IMG/VR virus record: IMGVR_UViG_3300044625_001067
Location: 1 to 64,000 of that record
Length of the DNA stretch: 64,000 nucleotides
Strand: one strand, 5' to 3'
Notes under the pieces: model-generated
Told to the model about the DNA's origin: nothing
Database searches by the model: none
What the model saw: only the letters and a program-made list of their open reading frames with translations
Shown here: piece after piece, positions 4,369-61,759 of the stretch
How the letters are laid out: each line of letters begins with the position of its first letter
Position numbering within the stretch: position 1 is the first letter of the stretch
Made by a program: the position numbers and the translations under genes

Positions 4369-4412
4369 GGGCGGTTTCCCGGCTTGTTTCTGCGGCGCAT
4401 AACCGCTATAGT
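4369..4412 (+). promoter_or_regulatory. first copy of the repeated composite phage promoter (about 38 copies in window)
   Basis: GGGCGGTTTCCCGGC-TTGTTT-17 nt-TATAGT. Similar copies at approx. 5553, 7398, 10383, 10709, 11235, 13012, 13906, 15001, 15422, 16320, 17331, 19023, 19998, 20383, 21401, 23218, 23758, 24198, 29025, 29702, 30291, 31442, 32235, 33878, 34855, 38233, 39702, 40528, 40788, 43861 (+) and 49714, 52198, 54336, 57650, 58605, 58963, 61451 (-). Confidence 0.9.
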
Positions 4413-7400
4413 TACTTCAGTCTACGCAACCGACTGTGAAAAAGTCCACCCTTGACCTCTTTGAGGATAAAGCTCAGAAGGAAGACGAGCTTAAATTTGC
4501 ACTCTGCGAAGAGTTTGCATCTGAGATGGAATTGCCTGTAGACTACGTCTACGCTGAGTTTGTGGACCCCAACACCACCTCTTTACAAGAGGTTAAGTCA
4601 GTCCTTGATTCTTTCTAGGCTGCTTCGCAACGCTACCCCAACCAACTTCCCTGCAATGCCTGACACTTTAGACTTTAGTGGAAACCTTGTGACCTTTTTA
4701 GGTCTCATCGGTGTTACATCCACGCTCGTTATCTACGTGGTGGTATCAAGAACTTTCTGGTCTTCACCTTTTCGGCGTTAGCTCTCCGCAGTAACTTCGC
4801 AAAGACACACAACCACTCGGCCATGAGACTCAATTATTTCAACCTTCTAGCCACTCTCTGCATTGGGGCACTCGGCAGCTTAATGTTCCCACACGCCATT
4901 TTCCTGTTTGCCTTTGTTAATGGGTTTTGCGGTAGCACTTTGTACCCCATTGTTGAGTTTGAGTAGCACTAAGGAGCACTGAAGACGCTCGAATGCCTGT
5001 ACAAGGCCCCCACCTAAACACTCCGCACCCTTGTTGCGCCCCAAGCAAAATGGCAAGCTTCACCGACGAACGTTACATGGACCTGGCTACGGAAATTTAC
5101 CTTCACCTTATCCGGGAGAGTGGACCTCATGCACTTCTTGACTTCGAACTGAGGGAACTAGCTAAAAGGGCAGACGATGCTGCAGCTGCTCTGGCGGATC
5201 GATTCCTGGAGGAATGAGCCAACCTTGCATGAAAACATACCAATTTTGGTACGGATCCCCGCACGGTGATGGGTCAGAAGTTCACTATAGATCAAACCAC
5301 CAGCCGGTGTTCGAGTGCTACTGCGAAGGAATTGAAGAAGCAGTGAAGCTATTTGAAGCACAAACACAAAAGTCCTTCATGAGAGGGTACAGCATAAGTG
5401 TTGATTCGGACTTAAGCTTCCCGGAAGTGAACTACTACGATCGCCCGAACTTTGCACCTGTAAAGGGTTTCAGGGGTGTGAGTAGACTACGTTTGAGGTT
5501 AAGCTTTAAGCTATGGTGCGCCTACCGAGAAATTGTACATAGTTGGAGAGCTGGGGCCGGTTTCCCGCCCTTGCTATCTTGAGCAGAAAGCGGTATAGTA
5601 GAGTCAGTTAACCCACCTTTGGCCAACAGCCATGAACACCTCTAAACTGTGTCCCAACGCTCAAGAGCTGTACGACGCCGCAGAATCCACACTTAAGCAA
5701 TTTGGGATCCCCGAGGATACCCTTCGCACAGCGTTGGCCGCTGCCCTACACCGTCTTTCAGACAAGTGGGAGAGGGAAATTGGAATTTTCAATAACAAAC
5801 CAAAAACTGAGTTTATACGTGGGATCACAAACTGTACGACCTCTTTGACAGAGATTGCTGACGACTTAGATGGAAAGTCCTGATAACCATTTATACGGAC
5901 AAACCTGAAGATTACCACATGAAAAACACCACCTCAACCCACTCTGACAACTTGAGTCTTGAAGCTCAGCAAATTATGGACTTCATACAATTACGAGACT
6001 ACCAGAAAAGGCATGCTCAGCTAGTCGTCTCCGCTGCTTTCCAGGCTTTGGCTAACCTAACAAAGAGTGAAGTTTCCCGACTTACCCCTGAGTTACTAGA
6101 GACCCTCTCAAGAGAGTTTCAATGGAAAGCACAACACCTGTAACTACGTTGCATTGATGACCACTCCCAAAATTAAGTATGAGATCACCCCCGAAGACGC
6201 ACGTAGAGTCGCACAAGCTCTTCGTAACGAGGCTCACCAACTCGAAAATGAGAGCGAACGTGCCTGTGAAAAGGGCTTCGACGACTACGGCACCTTGCTC
6301 TGGAAAGAGTGTTCCCTTCACAATAAGCTGGCTGATTACTTCTACCCCTTAGGTTAAACAACTAAAGCCCCTTAACCCTCGAGATTACTATGGAAGTTCC
6401 AGTTTTGTTAGTGATTATCGTGTCCGCCGTTGCCGTTGCAGGTGTGGTGGCAACTTTAGTCCTGTACAATGTTCTTCAAGGTTTGACAAGGAGAAAATGA
6501 CGATTGACCCCTACGGTAACCTTCGTTCTTTACAAGAGGTTAAAGCCGCAACACAAAAGGTAGTGAGTGCGTTTAGCCATCGTCACAACCCTGAAGCTGA
6601 CTCCGGCTTTAGCGCCCTTGCTGAGGCCATCCGTGTTGCAGCCCAGGAAGCTTCACCGGTAGAATACGGCTCACTATACGGTTTTCCTATGGAATACAAA
6701 TGCCATGTACGTGATGCCCTGAACCTAATCGCGTCTGAGCTGGACGCTCTGGCCCTGAAACGCGAATCCTTTCTAAGGCAAGGCTCTGACTGATTACTGT
6801 CGGGTAGTCCCACGCAGCTCTTAAGCGAAATCAGCACACACTTCTCAGGTTAAACACCCCCGTAGCCAAATGTCTGGAAAGTTTTCGTTCAGCAAACTAG
6901 TTTTAGGTTTGACACGCCCCAAGGCGGTAACGTCAGGAGTCGTTGCGTACTACCTTCAACCACTCATACACGGCAACAACACCGCACTGAATATGCTATT
7001 TACAGCATTTTCCGTTCTAGCCTACTTAATTGCCATCCTGATTGTGGTGGTCGGAGATCCTTTTCTGATCCCACCGGGAAGCTGGAGGGTCGCCGAGGTG
7101 TACCGGGAACGTCTCAATAGACGATGGGCTCGCCACCAGGTACTCTTCCTGTCTTACCTTGTTACGCTCGGGCTTATTTTTATATCCGTGCTGGTGTTAA
7201 AAGCTGCTCCCACCCAAAGTATCTGGTTGGAACGAATATACCTGTTCCTTGGCATTCTCGCATTCTCCCATTCGCTGAGTATTCCAAGTGTTTTAATTGC
7301 TGCCCAAAGAGAGCGAATTGATTCTGTTATCGAGTCGAGGAGAAGGCAAGAAGGTATTGCCCCTCGAACCGATCTGGGAGAGGGGGGGACTTGGTTAGGG

Positions 7401-7466
7401 CGGTTTTCCACCCTTGTTTCTGCTCGGCAGTAACGTATACTTAATTCAGTTGAGACACTCGAACCA

Positions 7467-7979
7467 ATGACCCTCGCCCTCGCCCAGCCCCAAACTCTCA
7501 GCACAAAGGAACTTGTAAAGGGCCTAGTCTTCCATAACTACGCAGAGCGCAAACCCGAAGAAGGGTTATGCATCTGGAGGATGGCACACAAGAGCGAAAA
7601 GTTTACAATAGTGTTCACAGCAGAGATGCGGATTCGAGGCGCCGGGTTCAAAAACGTGCTGTCGCCTGAGTTTGACTACTGGGATGGCTACAGAGTGATT
7701 CTTCCCAAGGGGCTGATTGAGTGGGCGGAAATCCCGGCTGGTATGCCCTTGCCCCGAGGACTTGGTAACCACGTGCTTGATATTCCCGGCGTAGAGCACG
7801 AGAATTGCCCCTTTTGCAGGAGCCAACCTAAATGGCGAAGTGGGGGCTTCGGTGGCTATACTCCACTAAACCACACAGACTTTCACCTTGTGTGCTGCAA
7901 GTGGTTCAACGGAGAGCGCAACCGTTCCCACGACCCCGTAGCGTTAGCCGCAGCCAGAAACGCAGCTATAATCGGATAA
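7467..7979 (+). CDS. hypothetical protein with CxxC motif
   Basis: ATG directly after promoter copy at 7398; CPFC...CC. Confidence 0.6.
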   Translation: MTLALAQPQTLSTKELVKGLVFHNYAERKPEEGLCIWRMAHKSEKFTIVFTAEMRIRGAGFKNVLSPEFDYWDGYRVILPKGLIEWAEIPAGMPLPRGLGNHVLDIPGVEHENCPFCRSQPKWRSGGFGGYTPLNHTDFHLVCCKWFNGERNRSHDPVALAAARNAAIIG

Positions 7980-8323
7980 TGGGTCCGTACAACTTATTTC
8001 GGGCAGTTCAAGACCAGTTTCCCCTTCAAAGGGCACTTCGAAACTTTTTCGTCACCGGGTTCGCCTGGGGCCTTTTCTCTCGAAACTCTCACATTTCGCT
8101 CAAGAGTGGGAAGCCAAAAGTTGTATACAGCAGCAAAAGCTCAGCATTGAACGCAGCCGACTCGATGCAAAAGAGACTCGGTGGCACCTTCAGTGCGTAC
8201 AAATGTGCATTTTGCGACGGATACCACGTTGGCCGTAGTCGAACTCGACAAGAGGCGCGAGAGCGTTGCTCTCCCTTTCAGTTTACCATCCAAACTACAA
8301 ACAATGATCAACGTAATCCTTGA
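7979..8323 (+). CDS. small Zn-finger phage protein
   Basis: 'AYKCAFCDGYHVGR' motif; ATG overlaps the upstream stop. Confidence 0.55.
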   Translation: MGPYNLFRAVQDQFPLQRALRNFFVTGFAWGLFSRNSHISLKSGKPKVVYSSKSSALNAADSMQKRLGGTFSAYKCAFCDGYHVGRSRTRQEARERCSPFQFTIQTTNNDQRNP

Positions 8324-10198: not shown

Positions 10199-11234
10199 AT
10201 AGCGAAAGTAACAATTTGGAGGGGTGGAGGAAGTGCTGCCCCAGGGTTGTTACAGCCCTCAGCACTCCTCCACTATAATTTTACCCGGTAAAGTCAATGT
10301 TAGGGGGGGTACCCCCCCACCCCCCCTCAACATTGAAAACTTTTTTCGAAGAGTGCGAAGCATTATCTTCCCCCTCGCAAACGGACGGTTTCCACCCTTT
10401 GTTTCTGCGTCGCAGAAACGGTATAATAATAGTGTGTAAACGCTGACCCATGGAGAACCCCCTCACTCAGTTTAAATATGCTTTTCAGTTTTGGGCTGCT
10501 GCTGTTTTTGGTGTGTATTCACAACACTTTTACGAGTGGGATGAGTGGTTGTTCCGCGATACAAGGTACACGCAAGAAAATCTTACGGGACGGTTCTGGC
10601 AAGAGATCAATGACGGCTGGGATTGGATGCAACCTTATATGATTGAGCACCTTGCGGAATTTAACTCGTGGGACGAACTCACCCCTTAGTCACCATCAAC
10701 CCCGAAAACGGGCGGTTTCCACCCCCTAGTTTCTGCTTGGCAGAAACGGTATAATAATAGCATACAAACGCCAGACCCAATGCCGAACTACAAAACCGTG
10801 GAAACCAGCCCCGAAGTCTGGGCGGTCATTCGTGCTCGCCACCCTGAGCTTGTGCCGTTCGGTACTGCATCATTTGAAGGCGACATGTTTACAAGTTATG
10901 GATTCCCTGGGTGTGACTTTCCGGTGATGGAAGCTCGAACCACTTGGGACATCAACCCCGAGGAGAGGTGGAAGCGCAACAACGAGCAGCATCGCTACTG
11001 GCTGTGCTTGCCCATTGAGAACCAAGATTGAGAACCCATCCGCATGGAGGCTATACTGCAACTTGAGACCAATGACTGAGGAACAATTCTACCTGCTGTG
11101 GGAGAAATTCGCCTATTCGACCCTGGTGGATTCCCTGCCCGACGATGTCCCACAAGAGTGCGAAAGACTCGGCATTTCCGTTGATTACTTCCTCTTCGAG
11201 TTTATCTAGTAGAAACTTTGTCAAAAGGTTGGAT

Positions 11235-11300: not shown

Positions 11301-13455
11301 AGTTACAGCGAACTTCACCAGCCATGGCCGTCACCCCTTACGCCCTGCTTCCCACCTTTGAGCGGGACTACATTATGACTGAGATTCTTCGCTACAACGA
11401 CGGCAAGGAGGTCGTCAGCAAAACCGCTGTGTGCCGCCTGACTGTAAACCGCGCCGCAAGCGTTACCCACCTCCCCGGCCACAAGCACGGCAGGGTTAGC
11501 TTCTGGCTCGATCACGACCCACGCATTGTTGCCGTCTCTTACACCTACGCGCTGGCCTGACCCACGGCTCGCCGGGGCTCCCCGGCAGCAATCCACCACC
11601 AATGACACCCTCAGATTTAATCGCCATGCCTGCCACTATTCCCGCCATCACTGGCCAGCCGACCCATGAGTTTAACTTTGATCACTGCGTCTACCGGGAG
11701 TTCTGGGCTGGAGAGTACCCTTACTCTAGTCATTGCCGCGCTCAGTTATTGGGACTAGACGGAACAGTTGTAAGAGAGTTTCATTTCTCAACGACCTTCA
11801 ATCGGCTCCCGACCGATGCCGATTGGTGCAAATGGTGGGCTAGGGATTACATACCAGCCGATGCCACCATTGATACTGTCGTGGACATGTGGACGCGCCG
11901 AGGAAAGACCGCTGAAGAACTGATGGCGACCTTAGGTAAAGCCGTAGAAGCAAAAAGAGCAGCAATATCCAGAGACAAAAGACCGCTGTTTTCGTACAAA
12001 GGCAATGCTTTACGCAATGAATGGCGTAAGATTTACGAAGAAAAGAAAGAGTGCAGAAGGTTTTTGGCACATCAGGGCCATTTGCTACAGCAGTTTTTGA
12101 CAGGTGGCAAGAATTATTTGCCTGGGAGCTTTTGACCCCAACCCCCGGCTAACCCCAACCCGCCAGACGCCGTGAGCTTGGCATCCCATCCCATTGCATC
12201 TCAACCATGGCCCAGCCCATCCCCACCGTTGCCGACATCCTGGCCAGCACGTGGCTTGGCGGCGATCTCCATGAATGGAACACCGACGCTGCCGTGATCC
12301 GCATCACCCGATCCGAACTCCGCTCGGCCCTTGAGAATGCCTACGACTCACTGATGCCCAACTGGCCCGCCATGGTGGAGATTGACGATGCCTGACCCCA
12401 CCATGACCACACCATCCGAACTGTTTACGCACCCACGCCCGCGCTGTGTCGTCACAACTGTCTACAGCGATCCCGCTGTCAGCTTGACCGTTCAGGCATG
12501 GCGCCGCGAGCTATGCTCTTACTACCTGCTATTTCGGATAGCAAATCAGTATTCATTGACCCTTAACGAAACTGCGGTTTTTTATTTTTTCCGCAGATTT
12601 CCAGACTGGTATATTCAGCCTCCAGGAGGCTGGGCCAAGCACACTTGGAACCCCGCCACCGATAAGCGGGTGTCGGCACAAGCGCTCGCCGTCGTAGAGG
12701 CTTGGCTGGCCGAGCAAGAGGCCAATGCCTGACCCCACCTGGCGCGACCACTGCCGCCCAATCATTACCGCCGTGATCCAGCGGGTCGGCACCGAGGACC
12801 GCAAAACACTGCAGCTGGCTCTGGACGCTGCCTACCCCCGCGACCGTGGCCGCGTTTGCTGCTTGACAGGCAGGGACGACGCCTACGATGTCTGGTGCGA
12901 TGAGGTCAGGCGCCAGCAGCTCTCGCTTCTGGGTGCCGAATGACACCTGGTCCTACCGGTGCCGATCTCCAGCGTCGGTGCCACGCCAGGGATTAGTGGG
13001 TCGTGGTCCAAGGGCGGTTTCCCGTTTGCCCTGGGGCGGTTTACCCCTTGTTTCTGCCCCGCAGAAACGGTATAGTAGTTACAGCGAGTCAGTTCAGCAC
13101 TGGCTCAATCGCGATTTCTAACCCGACCCTTTACTCTGAAAATGGCAACCACCTACATCAACAAAGCTCAACGCCAGACCTTGATTGATCAGTTCATGGA
13201 GTGTTGGTTTGACACTGAGAGTTATTCCACCGAAGACGCCGCAGAGGAAGAGGGTCGAGAAATGCGTGCTGAACTAGAATCCCTGAACAACAGCCAACTT
13301 ATGGCTGAAATTAAGAAAAGTGAATGGTCGATCTTCACGTTAAACGGTTGTTCCATCTAAGGCGGATCCCCCGTCTCACCTTTCCCCGTGAAACACCCTA
13401 AAGTAAGTAATGTGAACTTGACCATCCACCCCTCCACCCATACCTATTAAACACC

Positions 13456-13896: not shown

Positions 13897-15497
13897 GTCT
13901 TGTGTGGGGCGGTTTCCCGTTTGCCCTAGGACGGTTTACCTCCCTGTTTCTGCAGGGCAGAAACGGTATAATAAATACAGCGAAACGACCCCGGCAGTGA
14001 CCACCCTCCAAAATCTGAGCCACGACGACACTCACAACCGTCCGACCCAGTACGAAATCGTGGTGGTTATCGACGGTGAACGGATTCTCGCTGGCTACTC
14101 GGCAAAGAAAACAAAGAAGGCTCTGCTCACCGTCGCACTCGACAACGATGATGTCCGCCTCCAAATGCTCGCAGCTCTTCCCGCCGACGACGCCTCAACC
14201 CCAACCTACACCGCTCGCAACGGGTGGGTTCTGGGCAACTCCGTCATTCGTTGGTCCGGTGGAACACTCCGTCACCCTGCCCTTAGTTCTTGACACAACC
14301 GCTTTAACTCGTTAGAACCCATTTCCAACTACCATGATTGAAGAAGCACTAGCCAGTTTAGACTGGGCACCATCCGGTTCCAAGTACATACTGGTCTCAG
14401 ACAACTCTGACGGTAGACGACTGCCGTACATTGGCCCTTTCTCTTCGCTCGCAGCCGCGTCCGACTGGCGCAGCGATGCTGAGAGGCAAGGGGTTATTTA
14501 CGCAAATCGCTACCACTTGAGAGCTCTACAGGAGCCCCAACCCCTGGAAGAATCACCGGCACTGACCAACTCTGCCGTCACTGACCTGCTAGACTATACT
14601 GACATCGGGAACGGTTACCACACTTGGCTCACCGAGGATGGCCCCATCACTGTCACTCGGGAAGAACTGCGCCGAGCTTTCGACAACGCCTACGACCCGA
14701 ACGAGCCGGACTGGGCGATGAGAGTGAAAATTGACGATTCCACTGTCCCCCTACGTTTGCTACCTTGAACTAGCATGGAAATCAACCTGCCCTACGTTCC
14801 CTTTCTGTCCTCCGACGTCCCGTTTAAGGGGAGGGTCTATCGCCCTAGGGGGCACTTTATTCAAATGCAAGTTATCGGCCCCATCTGGTGGGCTGGCGGG
14901 TACTGCTCGTCTCCCGAAATTGCTCGTGTAATTAGTGACCGTTTAAACGCCGCTTCCAAATCGACCCGTACAACATGATTCAAGCGTACGAAGACCTTTG
15001 GGGCGGTTTCCACCCCCTGTTTCTGCTCGGGAGAAACGGTAAACTAAGTGAGTTAAAAGGCATCCCACAATGACAGTCTCTGCTTCCGTGCTACTTTCAA
15101 TACTGTGTAAAGCCAAGGAGCTTGATGTTCGGGTAGTGTTTGATACCCGTGAGGAGTTCGGACGCTACAACGTAAACTTTCACTTCCCGGATCGCTACAC
15201 TGTCGATAAATGCTCCCTGAATCTCTTTAGTGAGAACATAGGGGAGGTAACCTTTGAGCAGGTGGCAGAAAGCCTCCTTTTAAGAGAAGATTCGCTGAGG
15301 CAAATAGAGCTGGACAGACAAGACAGCGAGAGGAAAGAGCTTCTGGAGCGGTTAAACCTATCCGACAAAGACAAGGAGTTACTTGGGTTGCAATCCTTGC
15401 CTGGCCATTAGACGGCAGGGTGGGCGGTTTCCCGGCTTGCCCTTTCCGCCAAACCACGCTATGGTAGTTACGGTGAATCGACCCCATCCTGAATCTT

Positions 15498-16262: not shown

Positions 16263-16987
16263 TTCTTTACCCTTAAACCCTTTATATCTTTACACTTCAG
16301 CTGTTGGCTGTGTGAAGTTGGGCGGCTTTCCGCCCCCTGTGAACCGGTTTACCCCCTTGTTTCTGCGGTGCAGAAACGGTATACTAAATGAGTTGAAAGG
16401 CACTCCCCAATGACCTCACCCACAAAGTCTCTCCGCCCAACCATCGCCAACTTGGCCGCAGGTCAAATTGTACGCGCTGGATACAGTTACCATGGCGACA
16501 CATCCGGGGTCGTCAAATACCGTTTCATAGGCTTCAGGTACAACGACACATGGTTCAGCAACTTGAGGGATCTTAAGAATTTCATGGGTGCCACGACTCT
16601 TGCGAGCCTAGAACAAGCAGCCGAACGCAGGGGCACGGAGTCAATACATGCTGGGTTCAAGAGTGAGCAGGGTGAGTACCAGTGGGAAGCCTACCTCTGG
16701 AACGGTGCCTTCCAAGTTGGAACGAGTGCCGATCGCCTTTTGCTCAGGGCTGCCTAACCTCCTTATCTTTGACCTTGGCTATTATGGAACCAACCATTCT
16801 CCCCTACCGTGTGTGCAGCAGCGTTGGCGCCGAGCACGCTATCCTTGCACTGTTTTTGAACCGACGACTGGCCTACCGGTTTCGGGACATTCTCTGGTCA
16901 GACTAACCCGCTTGGGTAGCTAATCCGCCCATCTGGGTCGAGACCCTGACTCCGGAAGGGTGGCTGCGCGACCCTGACTGATAAGTT

Positions 16988-17043: not shown

Positions 17044-19210
17044 TATGGGCAATTCAGGCAGGTCCGTCTACGGTGATCCCTTTGTACCAAGCACCTATAA
17101 CTGGGTCAGGGAAGGAGAAGTAGCTGTTGTAACTTACGGAGACACCGACGGCACTCGGTTCAGCATTCGCTACACCAAGGGGGCACTCCGACAGGCTCTC
17201 GTAGAGATTGAAAACAACTGGCTTCAGGGCAGTTCGTGGTTCTCCTGTGAACAGTCCTATGAATCCCTCAGAGCTTACTACCTGGCTGGCGGACAACTCT
17301 TTTCCTGGTAGCATCTCCGCTTTGGCTAGGACCGGATAACCGTTTGCTTAAGGGCGGTTTCCCGGCTTGGTTTCTCGAAGGAAAACCGGTATATGTAACT
17401 GTGATTACAGTTCACTTCAACTCTCCTATGCAAAACCCTTTCTCACCTGCAGCGGAAATCCTCCGACTCGACATTAACCCTGTGGACACGATTCACCACG
17501 AGGGGATGGTTTACACAGAGGTTAGTGGGTGCGACATATGGCTCGTACAGGGTTCCGAACCAAACCAGTTCTACGTTTCTAATGCGTTGGGGGTCCGTCG
17601 TTCGCAGATACGAGAGGACCCTACTGACGCGGTTCTCGACTTACTGGAGCTAGACCCAACGTTGTTAGGCCGCTGTAACACTTTCTTCCCCCGTACTAGT
17701 CCTGGCCCTGAAAACTTTCAACTTATCCCATCCGACTATGACTTTCGACTCAAAGACACCCTTTGATATTACGGTAGAGCTCTCAAAGGAGCAGGTTGAG
17801 CATATTGTCCAGGAAGCAATGCTCGAAAAGTTCCGAGACTACAACGTTGCAAAAGTTTCATTTGTGATCGGAACTGAGGAGGATCGAATGGGGTACACCA
17901 CCGGTCACTACCTTCGAACTGCAAAAGTTTCTCTGAGTAATAATCTGGGATCTGCTTCAAATGGACGTTGAACGTCAAACCTTGATGAGGAGCGAAATTA
18001 GCAGCGAAGTGGTACAATGACAATCCTTGCAAATTTCTCTTCGAGAAAACAAGCCGGTAAACCGTCACAGAGCAAGGGGTTGGGCCAGTGAAAGACGTAA
18101 CATACGTGAAGCTAAATGAGATTTGCAACCGTCACGAGATCACCCAATCCGCACGAGCAGAACTCCGAGAACTTTTCCGAGGTGTAATGAGCAGAGCAAA
18201 CTCAGACGAAGCCTTCCTTCGAGATTCCCTTGAAGACCGAGCAGAGCGTCAGCGACACCAAGACACTTCCTACCAGGGAAGTTGGTGAGTTACTCCGAAA
18301 GCCCACTCAACAAACAGTAAGATGGAAACCAAACGAGAAGGACCCCACCTCCACTTAACAGCAGATTGCTACGGGTGCCGATACGTGACTAGCGAGCAAT
18401 ACCGCTGCCAAAGCGACAGCGGGTCCGATGTTTATTGTACGCATCCCTCGTTTGAAACACGGCGCAGCATAGGCGACACTCGCTGGGTTACACCGGACTG
18501 GTGCCCCTTTGCAGCCCCAATGCTTTCCATACGAAAGCAACTTGAATCCCCCAAGTAACTTGAGTCACTCGTTGAGTCACTCGCAAACTCACAACTCAGC
18601 AAAATGACAACTCCCGCCGCAGCTGCCCTCTACCTTGCGCAGCACAACCTTACGATGGAAGGACGCAAAGTCGCAATTTTCAATCCAAACTCAAGAGACC
18701 TTGACCAGCTACCGGTAATCTTTGGTTTCAACAACGGTGGCTCTAGCGGATTCCTCGAAGGTGTTCTAGTGTCTGAAGATGGCACTTTTCTGGGCTCTCA
18801 CGCTTGCAGCAATGAAGCCTACATGTACCACGACCTTGGGATCTTGGAGGGTACTCGACCCGACCGCCACGAAAGGTTCCAAGAGCATTATCCGGTCGGG
18901 TACCGCATGGAGTTTGTCCCTTATGCGGACCTAAAGGAGCATACCGGACTCAATAAAGCCTTAGCTTTGCTCGACGCCAAAGGGGGACTGAATGCGTTTT
19001 CCTCCTATGATCCCTAAGAGGCTGGCTAACCGTTTGTTCTAGGGCGGTTACCCGGCGTGTTTTTCGAAGAGAAAACGGTATACTTAGTTTTTGGAGGAAC
19101 TCCTTCACAATGGCCAAGCTCCCCAGCACCGAGTTCCCTTACCACACGCAAAGCCGCTGGAACAATGCCCAGATACTTGCCCCTTAACAACCACCCTTAC
19201 ACACATTCCG

Positions 19211-19981: not shown

Positions 19982-20476
19982 GCGTGTTGTCCCATATGGG
20001 CGGATAACCGCTTGCTCTGGGACGGTTTACCGGCTAGTTTCTGCGTCGCAGAAACGTTATAGTAAGGGATGGAAAAGTCCCTAAGAAACTCGTCTTAACA
20101 CAATGAAAAACGTCCAACAACCTAATTTCCGCGATCTGTGCTCCAGACTCGCTGACGAGCTGCATAAAGAGACGTGTCTCTACCCCGGTTACGCTAGAGA
20201 GTCGGTGAGAGAGGCTGATAAGGCCCTCAAACAACCTGCTCTTCAGGTGAGCCGTGGGGAAGTATCTTCCCTATACTATGAACACGGTGGTAATGACTGG
20301 TATGAGGGGTTTTCCTGTGAAGACTTCGAGCGTGCTGTAGGCACTCTTCTGGCTCGTCTCGGTTATGTTGTAGTTTAAGAAGACGGATAACCGCCCCTGA
20401 AGTGGGCGGTTTACACCCTTATTCCACTCAGGCGAAACGGTATAGTAAAGGGGTGGAAAACACCGCCCCCAACCCG

Positions 20477-20731: not shown

Positions 20732-22270
20732 GTTCTCACCGATTTCACTCTCTAGTTAACAATCAACCAACTCTTGAGAAAATGGAAAACCTTTCACCTG
20801 CCCCCGACAACACTCTCGACGACCCTTTCACCTCGTACCTTGAAAACGAGCTGCTAAGCTCTGAGGACGAAGGCGACCGAGACAACGAAGATTGCTGAAC
20901 TTTCCCACCCAAACCCACTCTAGGACTGTTACCATCATGAAACCTTCCGAAACCTACTACATTGGAGACCTTGGATACGTTATTCAGGGTGGCGCATGGG
21001 ACGAGGTTTGTAACCTCACCTTCCCCTGTATCGGTGAAGAACGCGAAGGAAGAATCGTGCTCAAGGATGGCCGAGAGCTTTTCATCTTCAGTACAGCTCA
21101 CGGAGACGGCGAGTTCAAGGACCAGTTTGGTAACACCTACGGTGTAGACTCTGGCACACTCGGGGCAATCCGCGTTGAGGATATTCGGGATGACACTCTG
21201 ATCGAGCTAGGGTGTTTTCACACGTTCGACCAACCACTTTCGGACGCTGAATGCTGCAGCGTAGAAGGCGTTGTCACCTTCGGTCACATACACATTGATA
21301 CCGATCCTCTGCAAGATGACGAGGAGGATTACTTGGATGAAGACTGGTACGTCGAAGACGACGAAGACGAAGACGAAGACTGAGCAATATTCCAAGGTAA
21401 GGGGCGGTTTCCCGGCTTGTCTTTCCCTGGAAAAGGCGCTATACTTAGTTCACTCGCCCCTTTCAGCCATGCTCTACGAAGAAAAGTACCCAGACGGACT
21501 GCAAATGAAGCAGTTCAAATGGGTTGCGGGCAATAAGTATAGTCATAACTACTATTTAGGGTTTGACAATGACCTGCTGCTGGCCGAGAGTGACGATGAC
21601 GATACAACTGAGTGGTTCCTGGCCCACAACGAAACCTTCCGATACTTGGGTGAGAGCAAGTGCTCCCGTGGAGAACTTCTCGAACGACACGAACAACCCT
21701 GCACTTGAACTGCCAACTTAAGTCATTTCAACCCTGAAGCAACCCCCCCCCCCCCGAAGCAACACAATGAGCACCATTTTCAGCAACTCCCCCGTAAGAG
21801 TGAATCTTACGAGAGCTCAGATAGAAGCGCTAATCAAGCAGGAGGTTGGGCGGTCCTTACCAAACTTCTCCGCAGATGTAATCTCATTCAAAGTTTCCAC
21901 TCAAACTGATATGAGACGCGAGATTTCTGGAACCACTTTTGAAGGTGTTGATATAGTTCTGAAGCCTTCACATCTCACACCATGGGATCGATGACTAAAA
22001 TCAAGCACTTTTCAAAAGTTGAACTCGACCTTGCCTCTGTCAAAGATGCCGTGATTTCTTCTCTGGAGACTCAGTTTCCGGGGCAGAAAGTTACGAGTAT
22101 TCTCCCTTTGTACTCAAGCCCTGTAGGATACTACGAGGACCGTTTTCCCTCACAGAGGGACTTTTCCGGGTTTGATGTTACTTTGGAGCCTGAGGGTTAA
22201 CCTGAAAGATTTCCTCAGGATCTCCACTAAAGGATCCTCAGACAAGCAAACAAAGCATCGGAGAAGCTCA

Positions 22271-37750: not shown

Positions 37751-38306
37751 CTCTTTCCCGCACAGCAAATATCTTTATGCAACCTTCAAACGAAGACCCC
37801 AGCTCAGTGGAAAAGATTGAAAAGGAAGTTATTGAGTTCTTGAACACAAAGGGAGGACGTGCAAAGCTTCGTGAAGTTCAAACTAGGTTTGAGCAGGAAA
37901 CAGTGAAGTCCATTCAAAACCTCACAGTCGCACCGGGGTCTGTAGTTCTCGACATGATTGCAAACAACAAGCTTTGTCTCAATTCCGATTGGGAAGTTGG
38001 TGTTAGACCCACTATTCCCATAAGCACGGCATCACCCAGGTACGTAACAACTGGGAGTTTTTCCGTGCGCAACGATATAAACTGCCCACGCTGCGATCTT
38101 CAGCATGTCGACCGGGGCGACTGGGCCAAGAGACTGCACAGGAAGCACCTCTGCGAACGGTGCGGCTGCATCTGGCAGCCTGAGGACGGGTATAGCTTCG
38201 GAATCTGACCCTAAGTGTTCAATTCAGTGAGCAGGGCGGTTACCCGCCTTTACCTTTCCGGGAGAAGGCGGTATGATTATAAGGTAACCAGTTTCGGTCC
38301 GGTCTG

Positions 38307-40527: not shown

Positions 40528-40572
40528 GGGCGGTTACCCGCCCTTTTGCCCCTCGGCGAAACGGGCTATAGT
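40528..40572 (+). promoter_or_regulatory. composite promoter 1 of RNA island
   Basis: GGGCGGTTACCCGCC...TATAGT; no plausible ORF follows. Confidence 0.8.
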
Positions 40573-40785: not shown

Positions 40786-40787
40786 AA

Positions 40788-40831
40788 GGCGGGAAACCGC
40801 CCTTTACTCCCCTAGCCAAACAAGCTATAGT
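40788..40831 (+). promoter_or_regulatory. composite promoter 2 of RNA island
   Basis: GGCGGGAAACCGCC box, TTTACT, TATAGT 40826-31. Confidence 0.8.
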
Positions 40832-43843: not shown

Positions 43844-43860
43844 TTGACGCCCTGGATTGA

Positions 43861-43925
43861 GCGGTTAACCGTTTGCTCCGGGACGGTTTCCCGCCCTTTC
43901 ACCTTTCTGCGAAACGGGTTATAGT
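43861..43925 (+). promoter_or_regulatory. composite promoter 3 of RNA island
   Basis: GCGGTTAACCG and ACGGTTTCCCG boxes, TATAGT 43920-25. Confidence 0.8.
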
Positions 43926-44660: not shown

Positions 44661-44715
44661 TAACGTTTGGGGCACATCTATGTGCCCTTGCGTACGTTTC
44701 TCGTAGAGAAACCTT

Positions 44716-44804: not shown

Positions 44805-44862
44805 TCTCACCTGAAAGTAGTACAGCAATAGGGTAAATTATAGGAGTCAATACGTATTTACC

Positions 44863-48332: not shown

Positions 48333-50072
48333 GACATAAGGGCAATGTGAATGCTGTCTAGCTGTTGAAGCAATATGTTCATTTTCGCTGCCTCGCTCAC
48401 AGCCAAATCAAGCTGTCCACGTGTCACATAAGTGGCAACTACCTGACTCGCTTGTGCCCTAAAGGTGGAGGAAAAGGCTTCGGCACACTGAGCTAAAACG
48501 AGCCAGTCTGAGTTGGGGAGACTCACCGAACGGTGAATTTCTTCACCTTCACCTTGTGTAAAGACCTGTGTAATCGCGGAAGTATGGCTCATGGGTTAGG
48601 ATTGTGGTTTTTTGGCCATTTCAAGCTGAGCCTTGTAGAGTGCCACCCTCTTCTGGGTACCCTTCTTAACAAGGTTCAGATGGTTGAGTGTTCGAGTGGG
48701 GTTTGTTGGTTTCATTGGGTATGGTGTCGCCTCTTGTGAAGTTGGTTTAGGAAGAGAAAGCCCCCTATCTTAGTGAAAACCTCGATTGGTTGCCACCTTA
48801 GGTACGAAGAGGTAAGATACCACTTTCCTTCGGCATTTTTGTAAACTTTCCCCACGAGTACATCCGTAGTGGGGCACTTGTAGGTTACGAACGATGGGAA
48901 GTTAAACCCAACTCGAAGGGGTGACTTGTACGGGGCAGGTTTATCGTACACGGTTGACCTCCTCCCAGTAGTCTGATCGTGGTTTGCTGGTTTTCGTCAC
49001 ATCTCTGACTCGGACCGTAGCTTTTCGCTTTCTAAGCATTTCAGCCAAGGTGGCCCTGAGTTTAGGGTCCGTGGTGGTATTATAGGCTTGTTCGAGTCTC
49101 TCGTAAACTGCGTCCCGGTTCGGGATCTGCAGGTTTTCCTTGTTCAGTACCTCAGAGCTGAGGTCCAGGGTTCCTAGTTTACCTTGGATTTTGTTCCTTC
49201 CGAAGTTCCCCGAGACTCTGCCGTTCGTTCGCAGTTTCGGCTTAATTTTGCTTAAGTTGCTGTTTTCCATGTCCTACACATGCTCCACAGAAAGATCGCG
49301 AGAAGCTTCGCATGAGTATTGGAAAGCCAAGTCCATGAGGTAGTCCTCTACTTGCCTGAGCTTTTCAAGAGCCGCTTCCCGTTCCTCGCAGAATAACTCC
49401 CATGCTTCCTCATCCCTAGTACCGCGAGATGGGCAGTTCGCTTGGATAAGTTTCTTTCGGGCATCGTGAACAGACGCCCAAACCCCGTTGTACTCAGACG
49501 CAAGGGTAGAAGCATTAGTTTCACTCTTCTCAGTGGCAGGGGTGCAGGTCATTGCTTTGCTTGCGGATGGGACTGAGGGGTCAACTTTTGAAGGAGGCAG
49601 GCGCGGCGAGCTCTCGCTTGGCGAAGAGCTTGGGGCTTGGCCCTGCCTTTTCGTTTTCGGCCCTTTTGGCGGGGTCCAAGTTTGGAGCGGACTGAGTCGT
49701 TTTCCATACATTTACTATACCGTTTCTGCGAGGCAGAAACAAAGGGCGAAAACCGCCCCATGAAGGAGGGTTAACCGCCCACTCTCCCACAAGGACTAGT
49801 TAGGGACTGGACTGTGTATTAACCCAAAGACGTTCAGGGTTATTCCAACTACGATGACAGCTACCACATCCCACTGCTTTTTCTTTACAAAGAAGGGAAG
49901 GCTCAGAGTGCTCCCTGTAATCAGAATTAATAGGCCCACCTTACGGTCCAAGAAAAGCAAAACAAATTGTCCAACTACCAGCGCAATATTTCCAAGGATG
50001 CGGAGGTAAGTGAGTCTGGGGCGGACACGTGGGTATTTCATGGTCCGAAGGTGTGATAGGTAGTTATTCGTC

Positions 50073-51725: not shown

Positions 51726-51729
51726 CTTG

Positions 51730-52191: not shown

Positions 52192-52441
52192 ATTTATATT
52201 ATACCGTTATTCCTCGTCAGGGCAAGGCGGGAAACCGCCCAAGGACAAGCGGTTTACCGGCCAACTTTAGCTTTTGGTCTCAGACCGGAAAAAGTTATAC
52301 TCTTCAACCCACTCATGAAGAGGGTCCTCATTCACAACGTCCCCACTGTTGTTCACATAGTCTTGAACCACCCAGGCAATCTCTCTAAACTCCAGGTCGT
52401 TCCAGGGCCATGACGCACCCACTTTGACGCCAGGGCAGCCC

Positions 52442-58574: not shown

Positions 58575-59296
58575 GGTTTGTGAGGGGTTGCTTGGACTGA
58601 AATAACTATACCGCTTTCCTGTCGGAAAGGAAAGGGGGGTGAACCGCCCGAGGAAAACGGTTTACCGCTCTTGGATCGAGCTAGTGAATCGACTCTCTAG
58701 CTCAGCGGCAATACCAAGGAGGGACTCACGGACGGAGTCGTTCCTTGCTTCTAGACCATTGTCCCACTCAACGTGCCCGGTGAAAGACGCGTAGTCCTCG
58801 GGAACAATCGAGTCAGCAGCAGCGCGAAGAGTGGCTGCTACAATCAGGTCAATTTCGGTCGTAGCTCTGCTCCGATACGCATTGATGGCTTGAGCACGAA
58901 TTGCTTGTGCTTTGGGGGAGAGATTTGTGAGCTGCTCCATTGGACTTTCTCGGCTACCCTATAATCATACCACCTTTCTCTCAGACAGGCAAGGCGGTAA
59001 ACCGCCCTTCCTCTGGGGCTAAGACCCGAACCTCAGTCTCTTTCCCACAATTGAGAGCACCGTTGACTACATTTCACCGGTCTGAGCGGGTAGCTCATTT
59101 TGGTTTTGAACGCATTTCTTTGTACTTCTTCTGCGTTCCTACCTGTAATCACTACTTGGGTCTTGCACAATGCCTCGTTGCCAGATAAAGCGGTGCAAAG
59201 CGCCAAGATCGCAATTGAAACTCTGTTCATTTTTCGTGTGAAAAGGGAAGCGGCGGGACTCGAACCTGAAACCGAGCCTTAGACCTCCGAAGTACC

Positions 59297-60696: not shown

Positions 60697-60746
60697 TAGA
60701 TAGTTGTTTTTCCCAAGAGAGTTAGGGTAAATCGCTGAACTATCTA
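60697..60746 (-). ncRNA. hairpin with TCAGC/AAAAACA internal-loop motif
   Basis: TAGATAGT-TCAGCGA...AAAAACA-ACTATCTA. Confidence 0.65.
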
Positions 60747-60764
60747 TGTTTGCCGAAGGCAAAG

Positions 60765-60886
60765 TCGAAGAGGCAAGATTCGAACTTGCGTATGGCGGTT
60801 CCTTTTGCGTATTGGGTAATTGCTGAATTACCTAAGCTAGGTAATCTTTTTGCATTACCACTGCCTAACCACTTGGCTACTCTTCG
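60765..60886 (-). ncRNA. tRNA scaffold whose anticodon loop is replaced by an AAAAAG-hairpin-TCAGCAATT module
   Basis: CGAAGAG/CTCTTCG; GCC-AAGTGGTTA-GGC; GTGGT/ACCGC; GCAAG-TTCGAAT-CTTGC. Confidence 0.8.
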
Positions 60887-61759
60887 GTTTTTCGCACCGC
60901 TTTGCTGGGTGGAGGTTAAGGGGCGAGGAGTGGAACCTTGAGCTCCACATCCGTATCATAGGTTGAGGGTGCTAGGGGTAAACGGACTCAAGCAGAGACC
61001 CTCACTCGGGGCCTATCGCGGGGCACCACTCATATACTCTCGAAAGGCGTTCATAAAGTACCTTACGTCCTCCTCGTAAGATGTGTCAGGGTCGTACCAC
61101 GAGAAGGGGACTTTTTGCGATATCTTCTTGGAGAAAATAAGGTCATACTTGGCTTCATCGGAGAGCTTAGACTCGTAGATTGAGTTGGCCTCCCTGTACA
61201 CTTTGCTTAACTCCTCAAAGCCCTCTACCTCCTCGTTCGAGTCCAAGGCACCTTCATACCACTCTTCGAGGGACTCCACAATTTCTCCAAGCCTTGCGGC
61301 GTAGGTGTGTTGGTCGTCCCTCAGTAAACTGTCACGAAAAAAGCGCAATTGACTCAGGGGTTTGTTAAACTTCCACATTGCTTTAGGGCTAACTGAGAAA
61401 GGAGGTATCCCCGAGAAGATGCTGTATACTGGGGTGTTTTCCATACGTGAACTATAGCGGTTTTGCTGAGCGAAGGAAAGGGTGAAAACCGAACCGCTAG
61501 GGGCGGTTAACCGCCCTGGCTCAAATTTGTTACTCGTCGAGTCCCCTTATACAACTCGATAACTTCACCATCTTCCGACACTCTTACGTCGTAATGGCGG
61601 TACTCGGTTGGTATTTCGTGTCCAACTAAGGGTGTGAAGTCTCTTAGAAAGTTCTCCCAAGAAATAACATTGTCTAGGCCACGACTTCGTAAGTTTTCTA
61701 CAAGACTGTCGTACTCCTCCCGCAAAGAAGAGGAAAAGGGAGCCCACTCGCTATGCGAT

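What the first reader, a model, noticed from the sequence alone, without database searches (positions are those of the whole stretch)
4369..61516. About 38 copies of a composite promoter with phased upstream boxes and a palindromic spacer
Seen: a GGGCGGTTWMCC box abuts a -35 (TTGTTT-like), then a 17-nt spacer and TATAGT/TATAAT. Many copies have a second box (often CGGTTAACCG) 22 bp upstream (checked at 11238/11260 and 30292/30314), about two helical turns. The -35/spacer often forms an inverted repeat (GTTTCTGCG-T-CGCAGAAAC). All copies point into the local gene direction. Inference: a regulon in which a dimeric factor binding in phase recruits or blocks host sigma70 RNAP; the hairpin could extrude as a cruciform, as in N4-type promoters.
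Basis: partly seen in the sequence, partly recalled or inferred. Interest (0 to 1): 0.66.

Follow-up and report, generated by a model that had tools for sequence, protein, structure and literature searches.

The report
Repeated cyanophage promoter cassettes with upstream box
A 277-kb lake cyanophage drives its early genes from about 95 near-identical switches (38 in this window), each a bacterial-type promoter preceded by a phage-specific GC-rich box; this is a known kind of phage device with some unusual details.

Summary
A two-block weight-matrix scan finds 38 good copies in the window (32 on +, 6 on -) and 94 in the whole 277-kb genome. Reversed-sequence controls give none.

Each copy has these parts:
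- a box GGRCGGTTTMCC;
- a weak -35 (cTTG);
- a 17-nt spacer;
- a -10 hexamer TATAGT.
A start codon follows either exactly 6 nt later (leaderless) or about 24 nt later without a Shine-Dalgarno sequence.

Further features:
- 46% of copies carry a second box 22 +/- 1 bp upstream.
- 43% have a spacer stem of 5 or more base pairs, with covarying arms.

The genome is a myovirus related to Synechococcus phage S-CBWM1. That phage has the same box-promoter layout but no spacer dyad.

The box core and the -10 are the slowest-evolving positions between strains. The spacer evolves faster than background.

The box is not enriched in three candidate host genomes. It does not behave as a conserved hairpin.

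Best reading: these are host primary-sigma early/middle promoters with a dyad site near -43 for an unidentified dimeric factor. They also act as recombination cassettes, like the PeSLs of T4-type phages. No phage single-subunit polymerase gene turned up to support the N4-type cruciform idea (that search's control was silent). There are no transcript-start data.

The parts
4369..4412 (+). promoter 1, single box
   Evidence: PWM 51.6; spacer stem 3; GTG 23 nt after -10
5555..5599 (+). promoter 2
   Evidence: PWM 44.8; stem 4; ATG +32
7398..7441 (+). promoter 3
   Evidence: PWM 29.7; stem 4; ATG +25, 170-aa ORF
10383..10427 (+). promoter 4, class-1 spacer dyad
   Evidence: PWM 49.0; 8-bp stem; ATG +22
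10710..10755 (+). promoter 5, class-1 dyad
   Evidence: PWM 43.3; 8-bp stem; ATG +24; lies at the right edge of a strain-variable block
   Evidence: PWM 54.3; boxes 22 bp apart; 8-bp stem; ATG +23
13009..13076 (+). promoter 7 with distal box
   Evidence: PWM 44.8; 8-bp stem. An RNA-library contig joins 13011 to 15422, box to box
13360..13404 (+). promoter 8, weak and degenerate box
   Evidence: PWM 18.0, the lowest accepted
13904..13972 (+). promoter 9 with distal box
   Evidence: PWM 48.1; 8-bp stem; GTG +24
15001..15045 (+). promoter 10
   Evidence: PWM 44.7; stem broken in this genome, 8 bp in strain G004
15422..15465 (+). promoter 11, no dyad (spacer ends AAACCACGC)
   Evidence: PWM 40.0. 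Strain G004 lacks 15434-16344; the breakpoint lies inside this box
16342..16385 (+). promoter 12, box core only
   Evidence: PWM 42.5; 8-bp stem; other breakpoint of the 911-bp cassette indel
17327..17395 (+). promoter 13 with distal box
   Evidence: PWM 41.4; class-3 dyad; ATG +32
19017..19084 (+). promoter 14 with distal box
   Evidence: PWM 44.8; stem 5
19995..20063 (+). promoter 15 with distal box
   Evidence: PWM 47.6; 8-bp stem, lost in G004 by one change
20379..20446 (+). promoter 16 with distal box
   Evidence: PWM 43.8; no dyad; no clear ORF within 120 nt
21402..21445 (+). promoter 17
   Evidence: PWM 50.9; class-2 dyad; ATG +23
23219..23262 (+). promoter 18, no dyad
   Evidence: PWM 49.1; ATG +22
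23753..23820 (+). promoter 19 with distal box, leaderless
   Evidence: PWM 52.8; ATG exactly 6 nt after the -10
24195..24263 (+). promoter 20 with distal box, leaderless
   Evidence: PWM 52.4; 6-bp stem; ATG +6
29025..29069 (+). promoter 21
   Evidence: PWM 50.7; class-2 dyad; ATG +25
29702..29745 (+). promoter 22, no dyad
   Evidence: PWM 46.6; ATG +32
   Evidence: PWM 57.9, the best. In G004 a 620-bp insert is flanked by two copies of this promoter
31443..31487 (+). promoter 24, box is a full palindrome
   Evidence: PWM 47.2; ATG +28
32234..32277 (+). promoter 25, box core only
   Evidence: PWM 33.5; right edge of a replaced block in G004
33876..33944 (+). promoter 26 with distal box, leaderless
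   Evidence: PWM 56.8; 8-bp stem; ATG +6, 134 aa
34856..34901 (+). promoter 27, weak box
   Evidence: PWM 27.0; ATG +24
38234..38277 (+). promoter 28
   Evidence: PWM 39.6; -10 TATGAT; ATG +29, 233 aa
39699..39767 (+). promoter 29 with distal box
   Evidence: PWM 28.5; -10 CATAAT
40528..40572 (+). promoter 30, tRNA-leader type
   Evidence: PWM 46.0; class-4 dyad; conserved leader shared with six other copies
40787..40831 (+). promoter 31, tRNA-leader type, box in flipped orientation
   Evidence: PWM 29.1; upstream of tRNA-Glu at 41220
43856..43925 (+). promoter 32 with distal box, tRNA-leader type
   Evidence: PWM 45.9; upstream of the tRNA cluster 44317-44806
49714..49783 (-). promoter 33 with distal box, leaderless
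   Evidence: PWM 49.8; 8-bp stem; ATG +6
52198..52265 (-). promoter 34 with distal box, leaderless
   Evidence: PWM 45.9; ATG +6, 153 aa
57650..57693 (-). promoter 35
   Evidence: PWM 30.5; -10 TAAAGT
58605..58674 (-). promoter 36 with distal box
   Evidence: PWM 45.4; 6-bp stem; drives the 275-aa hydrolase homologue shared with S-CBWM1
58964..59007 (-). promoter 37
   Evidence: PWM 39.1; ATG +23
61451..61519 (-). promoter 38, leaderless; its distal box is the perfect 16-nt palindrome at 61501-61516
   Evidence: PWM 29.6; ATG +6, 143 aa
18020..18067 (-). decayed copy: box, -35 and dyad but no -10, against the gene direction
   Evidence: Box block 23.4, -10 block -12.7; resembles the 'half PeSLs' of PMC4122927
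40448..40490 (+). decayed copy: box and -35 without a -10
   Evidence: Box block 19.8, -10 block -8.1

Best explanation
These are the early/middle promoters of a freshwater jumbo cyanomyovirus.

Core promoter. They are most likely read by the host RNA polymerase with its primary (group 1) sigma factor. The parts are a -10 hexamer TATAGT, a conserved G two bases before it, a 17-nt spacer and a weak -35 of which only cTTG is kept. Transcription should start 7 nt after the hexamer. This places the 12-nt box at -50 to -39, with the centre of its GGCGG-N4-CCGCC dyad at about -43.

The box. I take it to be the docking site of a dimeric DNA-binding protein. It sits where class II activators sit and would compensate for the weak -35. 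The second, more palindromic box two helical turns upstream would allow co-operative binding on the same face. The factor is not identified. It could be phage-made, carried in the virion, or a host protein with few chromosomal sites.

The spacer dyad. It is a lineage-specific add-on to part of the family. Selection acts on the symmetry and not on the sequence. It probably tunes or shuts off a subset of promoters, either as a structure-prone element or as an operator for small phage HTH proteins.

The cassettes. Because about 70 nt are repeated roughly 100 times, they also serve as sites where gene cassettes are gained, lost and swapped.

Late genes (171-277 kb) use a different, -10-only motif (GGGTAAAA). 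This is probably read by the two phage sigma factors.

Shown: the anatomy, the copy number, the conservation pattern, the link to start codons and the strain indels.
Inferred: which polymerase and sigma factor read them, the start site, protein binding to the box, and activation rather than repression.

Confidence by part: about 0.9 that this is a sigma-70-type promoter family for early/middle phage genes; about 0.45 that the box is a protein site acting as an activator site.
For: Promoter identity:
- 94 copies against 0 in reversed controls.
- All lie in intergenic positions and point with the genes.
- 11 copies have an ATG exactly 6 nt after the hexamer, never 5 or 7.
- 65 copies have a start 15-45 nt after it (median 24); only 4 of these have an SD-like 4-mer.
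- Two of the leaderless ORFs align with S-CBWM1 proteins from residue 3-4 on.
- Information content is about 43 bits: box 16.9, cTTG region 6.7, the 9 nt before the -10 8.0, hexamer 9.1.
- The -35 is weak by the E. coli consensus; the simple scan picks up only 3 of the copies in 10-30 kb.

Box under selection. In 75 orthologous promoter pairs with strains G001, G002 and G004 (93-95% identical):
- the GGT of the box has 0 mismatches;
- TATA has 0-1;
- TTG has 1-4;
- background is 0.068 per site.

Conserved layout. Phage S-CBWM1 (TerL 60%, Pol 57% amino-acid identity) has 17 promoters built as dyad box, then TTTACA, then 17 nt, then TAAGCT/TAAAGT. One stands before its sigma-factor gene, as here at 252154.

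Symmetric recognition. The well-conserved half of the dyad is promoter-distal here and promoter-proximal in S-CBWM1.

Not a host motif:
- 0 full dyads in three Cyanobium/Synechococcus genomes.
- 6 half-boxes against 8 in the controls.
- The composite is absent from 185,579 species genomes.

Second box: 43 of 94 copies at 22 +/- 1 bp. Its CGGTT has 2-4 mismatches in 75 pairs.

Cassettes:
- A strain indel has both breakpoints inside boxes (15433/16345).
- An insert is flanked by duplicated promoters (30287-30335).
- A replaced block is bounded by promoters.
- An RNA-library contig joins box to box with only 13 shared letters.

Late class:
- GGGTAAAA occurs 27 times on + after 171 kb and 3 times before it.
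- The two phage sigma factors look like group 3, SigF/SigB/FliA-like.
- From my own knowledge, group 3 sigma factors recognise GGTAA/GGGTAT-type -10 elements.
Against: - No transcript 5' ends are available. The RNA libraries were held only as contigs, which also break at repeats.
- No box-binding protein was found. The three XRE-type HTH proteins (95.7, 97.2, 170.6 kb) and one weak HTH_17 have no counterpart in S-CBWM1. The S-CBWM1 'DNA binding protein' homologue is a pyrimidine-dimer glycosylase. The 'transcription elongation' homologue is SprT-like.
- A factor conserved in both phages should exist if it is phage-encoded. A host factor should leave sites in host genomes. Neither was seen, though the real host is unknown.
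- In S-CBWM1 the box is a perfect 6-bp G/C hairpin followed by TTT, which also fits a terminator.
- The copies are paralogues. Part of their similarity, including the 22-bp spacing, could be inherited rather than selected.
Confidence: 0.6

Rival explanations
1. The box is not a protein site. It is a G/C stem-loop that terminates or stabilises the transcript of the preceding gene. Each unit would then be a terminator-promoter module of the PeSL type, with the T-rich -35 region serving as the U-tract.
For: - In S-CBWM1 the box is a near-perfect 6-4-6 hairpin followed by TTTAC.
- PeSLs of RB49/phi1 have a G(n)-loop-C(n) stem just upstream of a sigma-70 promoter (PMC4122927).
- 7 of 79 boxes here are perfect palindromes.
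- The distal boxes are usually palindromic.
Against: - In this genome the register gives a median of 4 of 6 Watson-Crick pairs.
- The roughly 25 GGACGG variants are never compensated.
- Between strains the would-be right arm (positions 13-14) changes in 10 of 75 pairs, faster than background. The left-arm core changes in 0 of 75.
- None of the boxes in 10-30 kb passes the terminator-like scan, which finds fewer such sites than shuffles do (14 against 21.9).
- The sharp 22-bp phasing of two boxes has no role in termination.
Confidence: 0.2
2. The promoters are read by polymerase carrying one of the two phage-encoded sigma factors (middle mode), not by the host primary sigma. The box would be contacted by that sigma factor or a partner protein.
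For: - Two sigma-70-family genes are conserved with S-CBWM1.
- The promoter carries far more information than a host promoter needs.
- The box is specific to the phage lineage.
Against: - The -10 and the TTG at 17 bp match the primary-sigma consensus.
- The phage sigma factors resemble group 3 (SigF/SigB/FliA) with a weak region 4.
- A separate motif, GGGTAAAA, fits them and marks the late region.
- The family covers the whole 4-170 kb block. That block includes a sigma gene's own promoter and the first genes at the divergence point, so some copies must fire before any phage protein is made, unless the factor is injected.
Confidence: 0.1
3. N4-type mechanism. The spacer inverted repeat extrudes as a hairpin or cruciform and is recognised by a phage single-subunit RNA polymerase.
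For: The best class has 8-bp arms and a 3-nt loop. Arms covary among copies and between strains.
Against: - No T7/N4-type polymerase domain was found in the 98%-complete genome (the control was silent, so this is weak).
- A canonical -35/-10 pair surrounds the dyad.
- Only 40 of 94 copies have a stem of at least 5 bp.
- Folding energy is -7.3 kcal/mol at best and about 0 for dyad-free copies that otherwise score as well.
- S-CBWM1 promoters lack it (mean stem 2.94 against 2.68 for shuffles).
Confidence: 0.02
4. Sub-hypothesis for the spacer only. The dyads are operators for small phage repressors, for instance the three XRE-type HTH proteins. These would switch off classes of early promoters later in infection.
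For: - The dyads are 17-19 bp and overlap the -35 and the spacer, the classical repressor position.
- They fall into a few classes: TTCTGC/GCAGAA 27 copies, TTTCC/GGAAA 13, TTCTC/GAGAA 6, a tRNA-promoter class 8.
- Three HTH_3 genes lie behind box promoters at 95.7, 97.2 and 170.6 kb.
Against: - The spacer evolves faster than background (0.096 against 0.068 per site).
- Hairpins are gained, lost or replaced by another type between 93-95% identical strains. Operators of a fixed protein would be conserved.
- A third of the copies fit no class.
Confidence: 0.25
5. The extended similarity, box included, is mainly a by-product of recent duplication and gene conversion among cassettes. Only the -35/-10 would be functional.
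For: - The copies are paralogues that spread together with leaders and N-termini.
- Recombination between copies is seen.
Against: - Conservation is position-specific, not uniform. The box core and the -10 are frozen while the spacer and the bases between the boxes are free.
- The same box at the same distance survives in S-CBWM1, whose core proteins are only 50-60% identical.
Confidence: 0.05

Closest known systems
PeSLs (promoter-early stem-loops) of T4-type phages (Arbiol et al. 2010; Comeau et al. 2014, PMC4122927)
   Same: - A repeated unit of 50-70 nt made of a G/C dyad immediately upstream of a sigma-70-type early promoter, reaching to the start codon.
- Placed between small ORFs of plastic genome regions.
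- Indels and swaps between close strains end in the repeats, and decayed half copies exist.
   Different: - Here the dyad does not behave as a hairpin: the right arm is free to vary.
- A second box sits 22 bp upstream.
- The spacer carries its own covarying dyad.
- There is no Shine-Dalgarno sequence, and 11 copies are leaderless.
- The phage is not T4-like.
- About 95 copies cover 60% of the genome.
T4 early promoters
   Same: Dozens of host-sigma promoters with much more conserved sequence than host promoters, including positions upstream of the -35. The phage also encodes an ADP-ribosyltransferase (99.2-100.2 kb), as T4 does (Alt/Mod; own knowledge).
   Different: The T4 upstream elements are A/T-rich UP-like sequences at about -42 and -52. 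Here the element is a G/C-rich dyad, with a repeat at 22 bp.
Class II activator-dependent promoters (CRP/FNR family; NtcA in cyanobacteria)
   Same: A 5-4-5 inverted repeat centred near -42, overlapping a weak -35 and paired with a good -10. Extra upstream sites lie in helical phase.
   Different: - The sequence is unlike GTA-N8-TAC or TTGAT-N4-ATCAA.
- No activator was found.
- The inferred centre is -42.5 to -43.5, not -41.5.
- No matching sites occur in candidate host genomes.
Box promoters of Synechococcus phage S-CBWM1 (Aokuangvirus)
   Same: Same order and spacing: dyad box, -35, 17 nt, -10. There are 17 copies in the early region and one before the sigma gene.
   Different: - The box is a full palindrome with the loop in the opposite orientation.
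- The -35 is stronger (TTTACA) and the -10 is TAAGCT/TAAAGT.
- There is no spacer dyad.
- I found no description of these promoters in the held literature. The original 2018 paper is not held.
N4 early promoters
   Same: A short hairpin with a 3-nt loop inside a promoter.
   Different: N4 promoters have no -35/-10 and need the virion RNA polymerase. Neither holds here.

Membership tests
Sigma-70 (group 1) type bacterial promoter | -10 hexamer close to TATAAT with A at position 2 and T at position 6 | tested here: met
   T, A, T, A and the final T are each 92-100% conserved; hexamer information 9.1 bits
Sigma-70 (group 1) type bacterial promoter | -35 element TTGACA-like, 16-18 bp upstream of the -10 | tested here: met
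   cTTG is conserved at 17 bp and the last three positions are free, so the -35 is weak
Sigma-70 (group 1) type bacterial promoter | Transcription starts about 7 nt after the hexamer, by host holoenzyme | not testable with these tools
   Indirect only: 11 ORFs begin with an ATG exactly at that position. The RNA runs were contigs
PeSL cassettes | Conserved early promoter repeated between small ORFs of variable regions | tested here: met
   94 copies in the 4-170 kb small-gene region, none but three weak ones in the late region
PeSL cassettes | Stem-loop (terminator) just upstream of the promoter | tested here: inconclusive
   A dyad is there. Pairing is poor here (median 4 of 6), uncompensated and not conserved between strains. 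It is perfect in S-CBWM1
PeSL cassettes | Indels and exchanges between close relatives end in the repeats | tested here: met
   4 of 11 gaps against strain G004 have a breakpoint in or within 15 nt of a cassette. Two are box-to-box or flanked by duplicated promoters. A box-to-box joint is seen in a contig
PeSL cassettes | Shine-Dalgarno sequence and start codon at the 3' end | tested here: not met
   The start codon is position-locked, but only 4 of 65 leaders hold an SD-like 4-mer and 11 are leaderless
Class II activator-dependent promoter | Dyad site centred near -41.5, overlapping a weak -35 | tested here: inconclusive
   The dyad centre is at -42.5/-43.5 if the start is 7 nt after the hexamer. 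The start site is not measured
Class II activator-dependent promoter | A known activator protein that binds the site | tested here: not met
   No candidate is conserved in both phages. The motif is not enriched in three candidate host genomes
N4-type hairpin promoter | Phage single-subunit (T7/N4-like) RNA polymerase | tested here: not met
   No PF00940 match in the 98%-complete genome. The control genomes were silent, so the search is not validated
N4-type hairpin promoter | Hairpin present in all promoters, with no -35/-10 | tested here: not met
   A stem of at least 5 bp in 40 of 94 copies; -35/-10 in all
MerR-type promoter | Dyad operator inside an over-long (19-20 bp) spacer | tested here: not met
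   The spacer is 17 bp in most copies
T4 MotA-dependent middle promoter | Activator box centred at -30, replacing the -35 | tested here: not met
   The box lies at -50 to -39 and TTG is kept at -35
Intrinsic terminator | G/C-rich stem of at least 5 pairs followed by a T-run | tested here: not met
   No box among the 14 terminator-like sites in 10-30 kb; shuffles give 21.9

The most novel reading that the evidence does not exclude
The box is the address label of a phage-lineage-specific transcription system. A so far unrecognised dimeric protein, phage-encoded or carried in the virion, with no detectable similarity to known regulators, would bind the GGCGG-N4-CCGCC dyad at about -43 and at -65. 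It would hand the host primary-sigma polymerase to about 100 phage promoters whose own -35 is too weak. In the same system the fast-evolving but symmetry-preserving spacer dyad would act as a DNA-structure switch, sensitive to supercoiling or strand opening, that times subsets of these promoters. This would be a new mode of host-polymerase capture in cyanophages, distinct from T4 MotA/AsiA and from the NtcA sites of T4-like cyanophages.
Probability: 0.2. Interest if true: 0.7.

Novelty: new variant of a known kind. Interest (0 to 1): 0.5.

Why it matters
Transcription control in cyanophages outside the T4-like and T7-like groups is almost unstudied. The Aokuangvirus-like lineage has no described promoters in the literature I could search.

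What this family offers:
- A clean two-class transcription map for a 277-kb phage from sequence alone: about 95 box promoters for 4-170 kb, and a -10-only GGGTAAAA motif for 171-277 kb.
- A 43-bit motif that can be used to annotate relatives, to call true start codons (leaderless and SD-less genes), and to find the unknown factor by pull-down.

If the box binds a new protein, it would show how a phage makes host polymerase prefer its DNA.

The cassette indels extend the PeSL idea of promoter-mediated gene shuffling beyond T4-type phages.

For synthetic biology in picocyanobacteria, the copies form a natural series of graded promoter variants.

Tried and rejected
1. Near-identical DNA in the phage collection: none.
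2. Kinship with Synechococcus phages B3/B23: this rests on a single shared gene in T4-like Kyanoviridae and is not the phage's family.
3. Transcript starts from public RNA runs. Six metatranscriptomes hold parts of the stretch, but only as assembled contigs, which break at these very repeats. No starts could be read.
4. Box as terminator hairpin: pairing, compensation, strain conservation and the terminator scan all speak against it in this genome.
5. Box as host regulon motif: not enriched in three Cyanobium/Synechococcus genomes. The two hits in a fourth MAG are copies of an unrelated repeat at contig ends.
6. Phage single-subunit RNA polymerase: no match, with a silent control.
7. Search for a regulator:
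 - Pfam over 201 early ORFs gave only three XRE-type HTH proteins and one weak HTH_17.
 - The S-CBWM1 'transcription elongation protein' homologue is SprT-like.
 - The 'DNA binding protein' homologue is a pyrimidine-dimer glycosylase.
 - A 62%-conserved early protein is a glucosyltransferase.
8. Known RNA family for the repeat: only tRNAs reach Rfam thresholds.
9. Literature: no paper in the held library mentions the box sequences or promoters of S-CBWM1. The S-TIM5 and S-CBWM1 genome papers are not held.
10. Spacer dyad in S-CBWM1: not present above chance.
11. The big protein searches, structure prediction and complex prediction were not used. No claim here rests on them.

Full report
What the window is.
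The window is the first 64 kb of a 277,244-bp virus record, rated 98% complete. The DNA is found in many lake-water metagenomes.
- It encodes a tail sheath, baseplate J, a T4-type large terminase, a topoisomerase II subunit, an intein-bearing ribonucleotide reductase and a mitochondrial-type family A DNA polymerase.
- Terminase and polymerase are closest to Synechococcus phage S-CBWM1 (Aokuangvirus), at 60% and 57% amino-acid identity.
- 98 ORFs have counterparts in S-CBWM1, including psbA at 75%.
- A phage EF-Ts gene has its 15 best matches in cyanobacteria, Cyanobium among them.
The host is therefore most likely a freshwater picocyanobacterium. This is an inference.

- The 12-mer box with one mismatch occurs 45 times in the window, against 1.2 expected. 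It occurs 62 times exactly in the genome, against 0 for the reversed pattern.
- A regular expression for box, 25-28 nt, then a -10-like hexamer gave 79 copies. Their consensus is gGGgCGGTTtcCcccCTTg, a variable stretch, then aaAaaCGgTATAgTaa.
- A weight matrix built from these finds 101 peaks and none in reversed controls.
- 94 peaks have a sound -10, and 38 of those are in the window.
- They lie at 4-170 kb, plus four weaker ones at 252-268 kb, and always point with the genes.
- The box-to-hexamer distance is 26 +/- 1 nt in 89 of 94 copies.

Anatomy.
Total information is about 43 bits. The box alone holds 16.9, more than the hexamer at 9.1. The -35 is reduced to cTTG.

Eleven copies have an ATG exactly 6 nt after the hexamer. 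This is the canonical start position, so these genes would be leaderless. Two of them align with S-CBWM1 proteins from their third or fourth residue.

Sixty-five copies have a start codon 15-45 nt after the hexamer (median 24), and only four of them have an SD-like 4-mer. This lock to start codons is the best available evidence that the units are promoters. It also fixes the likely start site. On that numbering the box spans -50 to -39, and the dyad GGCGG-N4-CCGCC is centred at -42.5 to -43.5.

The second box.
In 43 of 94 copies a second box, usually the palindrome CGGTTAACCG, lies 22 +/- 1 bp upstream. Random windows show it in 1.1%. Of all boxes in the genome, 73 are proximal, 38 are distal and 21 are orphans at one mismatch. 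Several orphans are decayed promoters.

Hairpin or protein site?
- In the 6-4-6 register only 7 of 79 boxes pair fully, and the median is 4 of 6.
- The frequent GGACGG variant is never compensated.
- In 75 orthologous pairs with three strains of 93-95% identity, the GGT of the box never changes and TATA changes 0-1 times. The would-be right arm changes in 10 of 75 pairs, above the background of 0.068 per site.
- No box passes a terminator-like scan.
- S-CBWM1 has 17 promoters of the same layout with a nearly perfect dyad. There, however, the well-conserved half faces the promoter, whereas here it faces away.
The flip means the dyad as a whole is the functional unit, as expected for a symmetric binder. 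A stem-loop role remains possible in S-CBWM1.

Whose factor?
- The full dyad is absent from three Cyanobium/Synechococcus genomes. The half-box is as rare there as its reversed control.
- The composite occurs in none of 185,579 species genomes.
- Seventeen IMG/VR stretches from related contigs carry it.
This argues against a large host regulon. Among the phage proteins I found no regulator shared with S-CBWM1. Three XRE-type HTH proteins are specific to this lineage. The factor is unidentified.

Which sigma factor?
The two phage sigma factors, conserved and syntenic with S-CBWM1, resemble group 3 sigma factors. The late region carries a different motif, GGGTAAAA. It has no upstream element and sits about 30 nt before start codons. 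It occurs 27 times on + after 171 kb and 3 times before it. From my own knowledge, SigF/SigB-type sigma factors read GGTAA/GGGTAT-like -10 elements, so this motif is their likely target. That leaves the TATAGT promoters to the host primary sigma. One sigma gene stands behind a weak box promoter in both phages, which fits an early-to-late cascade.

The spacer dyad.
- 40 of 94 copies have a stem of at least 5 bp.
- The classes are TTCTGC/GCAGAA (27), TTTCC/GGAAA (13), TTCTC/GAGAA (6), a tRNA-promoter class (8) and others. 33 copies fit no class.
- Exchanging 3' halves among copies lowers the mean stem from 4.56 to 3.43, so the arms covary.
- Between strains the spacer changes faster than background. 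Stems are gained (88850, 15001), lost (155950, 20020) or replaced by another type (165595, 162452).
- DNA folding gives -7.3 kcal/mol for the best class and 0 to -5 for the others.
- S-CBWM1 has no such dyad.
The dyad is therefore a lineage-specific, dispensable modifier in which symmetry rather than sequence is kept. I cannot decide between a structural role and operators.

Cassettes.
Against strain G004, 4 of 11 gaps have a breakpoint in or next to a cassette:
- a 911-bp promoter-plus-gene unit is missing, box to box;
- a 620-bp insert is flanked by two copies of promoter 23;
- a replaced block is bounded by promoters.
An RNA-library contig joins 13011 to 15422 with only 13 shared letters, too few for an assembly artefact at k = 31. 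This matches the PeSL model (PMC4122927).

Limits.
There are no transcript ends, no binding data, and the host is unknown. The copies are paralogues, so counts are not independent events.

Noticed in passing
window 45,600 and genome 143,642: The 98-kb block between these points is inverted relative to two related contigs (G001, G002). There an ORF runs straight across the junction; in this record the gene is split and no inverted repeat flanks the block. This is either a real inversion or a misassembly. In the other layout, all box promoters in the parts those contigs cover would point one way, as in S-CBWM1.
   Followed up: partly
genome 171-277 kb; also window 2368 and 3058: A second promoter-like motif, a.aGGGTAAAAct, has no -35 and sits about 30 nt before start codons of structural and replication genes. 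It occurs 27 times on + after 171 kb against 3 before. It is probably the late class, read by the two phage group-3-like sigma factors at 252.2 and 258.7 kb.
   Followed up: partly
window 40573-40640, 40832-40900, 43926-44000; genome 135.3-141.6 kb: Seven box promoters are followed by a conserved leader of 60-70 nt that begins AAAGGGGTGGTTGAGAG, holds two hairpins and ends near GGCAACTTGAAAATTTA, and then by a tRNA. This is a repeated promoter-leader-tRNA module. No Rfam family matches it.
   Followed up: partly
window 23827, 24270, 33951, 49707, 52191, 61444 and five more in the genome: Eleven genes start with an ATG at the predicted transcription start (leaderless). The other early genes have leaders of about 17 nt rich in C and A, with CCAATG-like start contexts and no Shine-Dalgarno sequence.
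   Followed up: yes
genome 99,204-100,169 (-): An ADP-ribosyltransferase (ADPrib_exo_Tox, E 6e-15) and, elsewhere in 1-104 kb, an ADP-ribosylglycohydrolase. The transferase shares a short N-terminal module with at least eight other ORFs and with S-CBWM1 gp165. Whether that module targets proteins to the virion, as in T4 Alt, is not tested.
   Followed up: no
genome 145.7-153.5 kb and one ORF in 104-171 kb: A likely DNA-hypermodification set: two SNF2-like proteins, a glucosyl-HMC-glucosyltransferase-like protein (62% identical to S-CBWM1), a TET-associated glycosyltransferase and sugar-nucleotide enzymes. If cytosines are modified, recognition of the G/C-rich box would involve modified bases.
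   Followed up: no
genome 108,990-109,595 (-): A phage-encoded elongation factor Ts, 56-60% identical to cyanobacterial EF-Ts. The early region also holds Thg1, a CCA-adding enzyme, a polynucleotide kinase/phosphatase and at least 13 tRNAs in the window alone.
   Followed up: partly
genome 276,690-277,244: The right end of the record is a tandem array. The left ends of strains G004 and G005 hit it at many offsets with 71-78% identity.
   Followed up: no
window 10286-10330; genome 195,990-196,020: Long homopolymer features: a G7-T-G7-TA-C7 palindrome next to a promoter-like TAAAAT on the - strand, and a run of about 27 T before a late GGGTAAAA motif.
   Followed up: no
genome 265,666-265,710 and 266,621-266,665: Two hybrid units: a flipped box and TTTACG, then 17-18 nt, then a -10 TAAAAT that overlaps the late motif GGGTAAAA. 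These are possible dual-class promoters.
   Followed up: no
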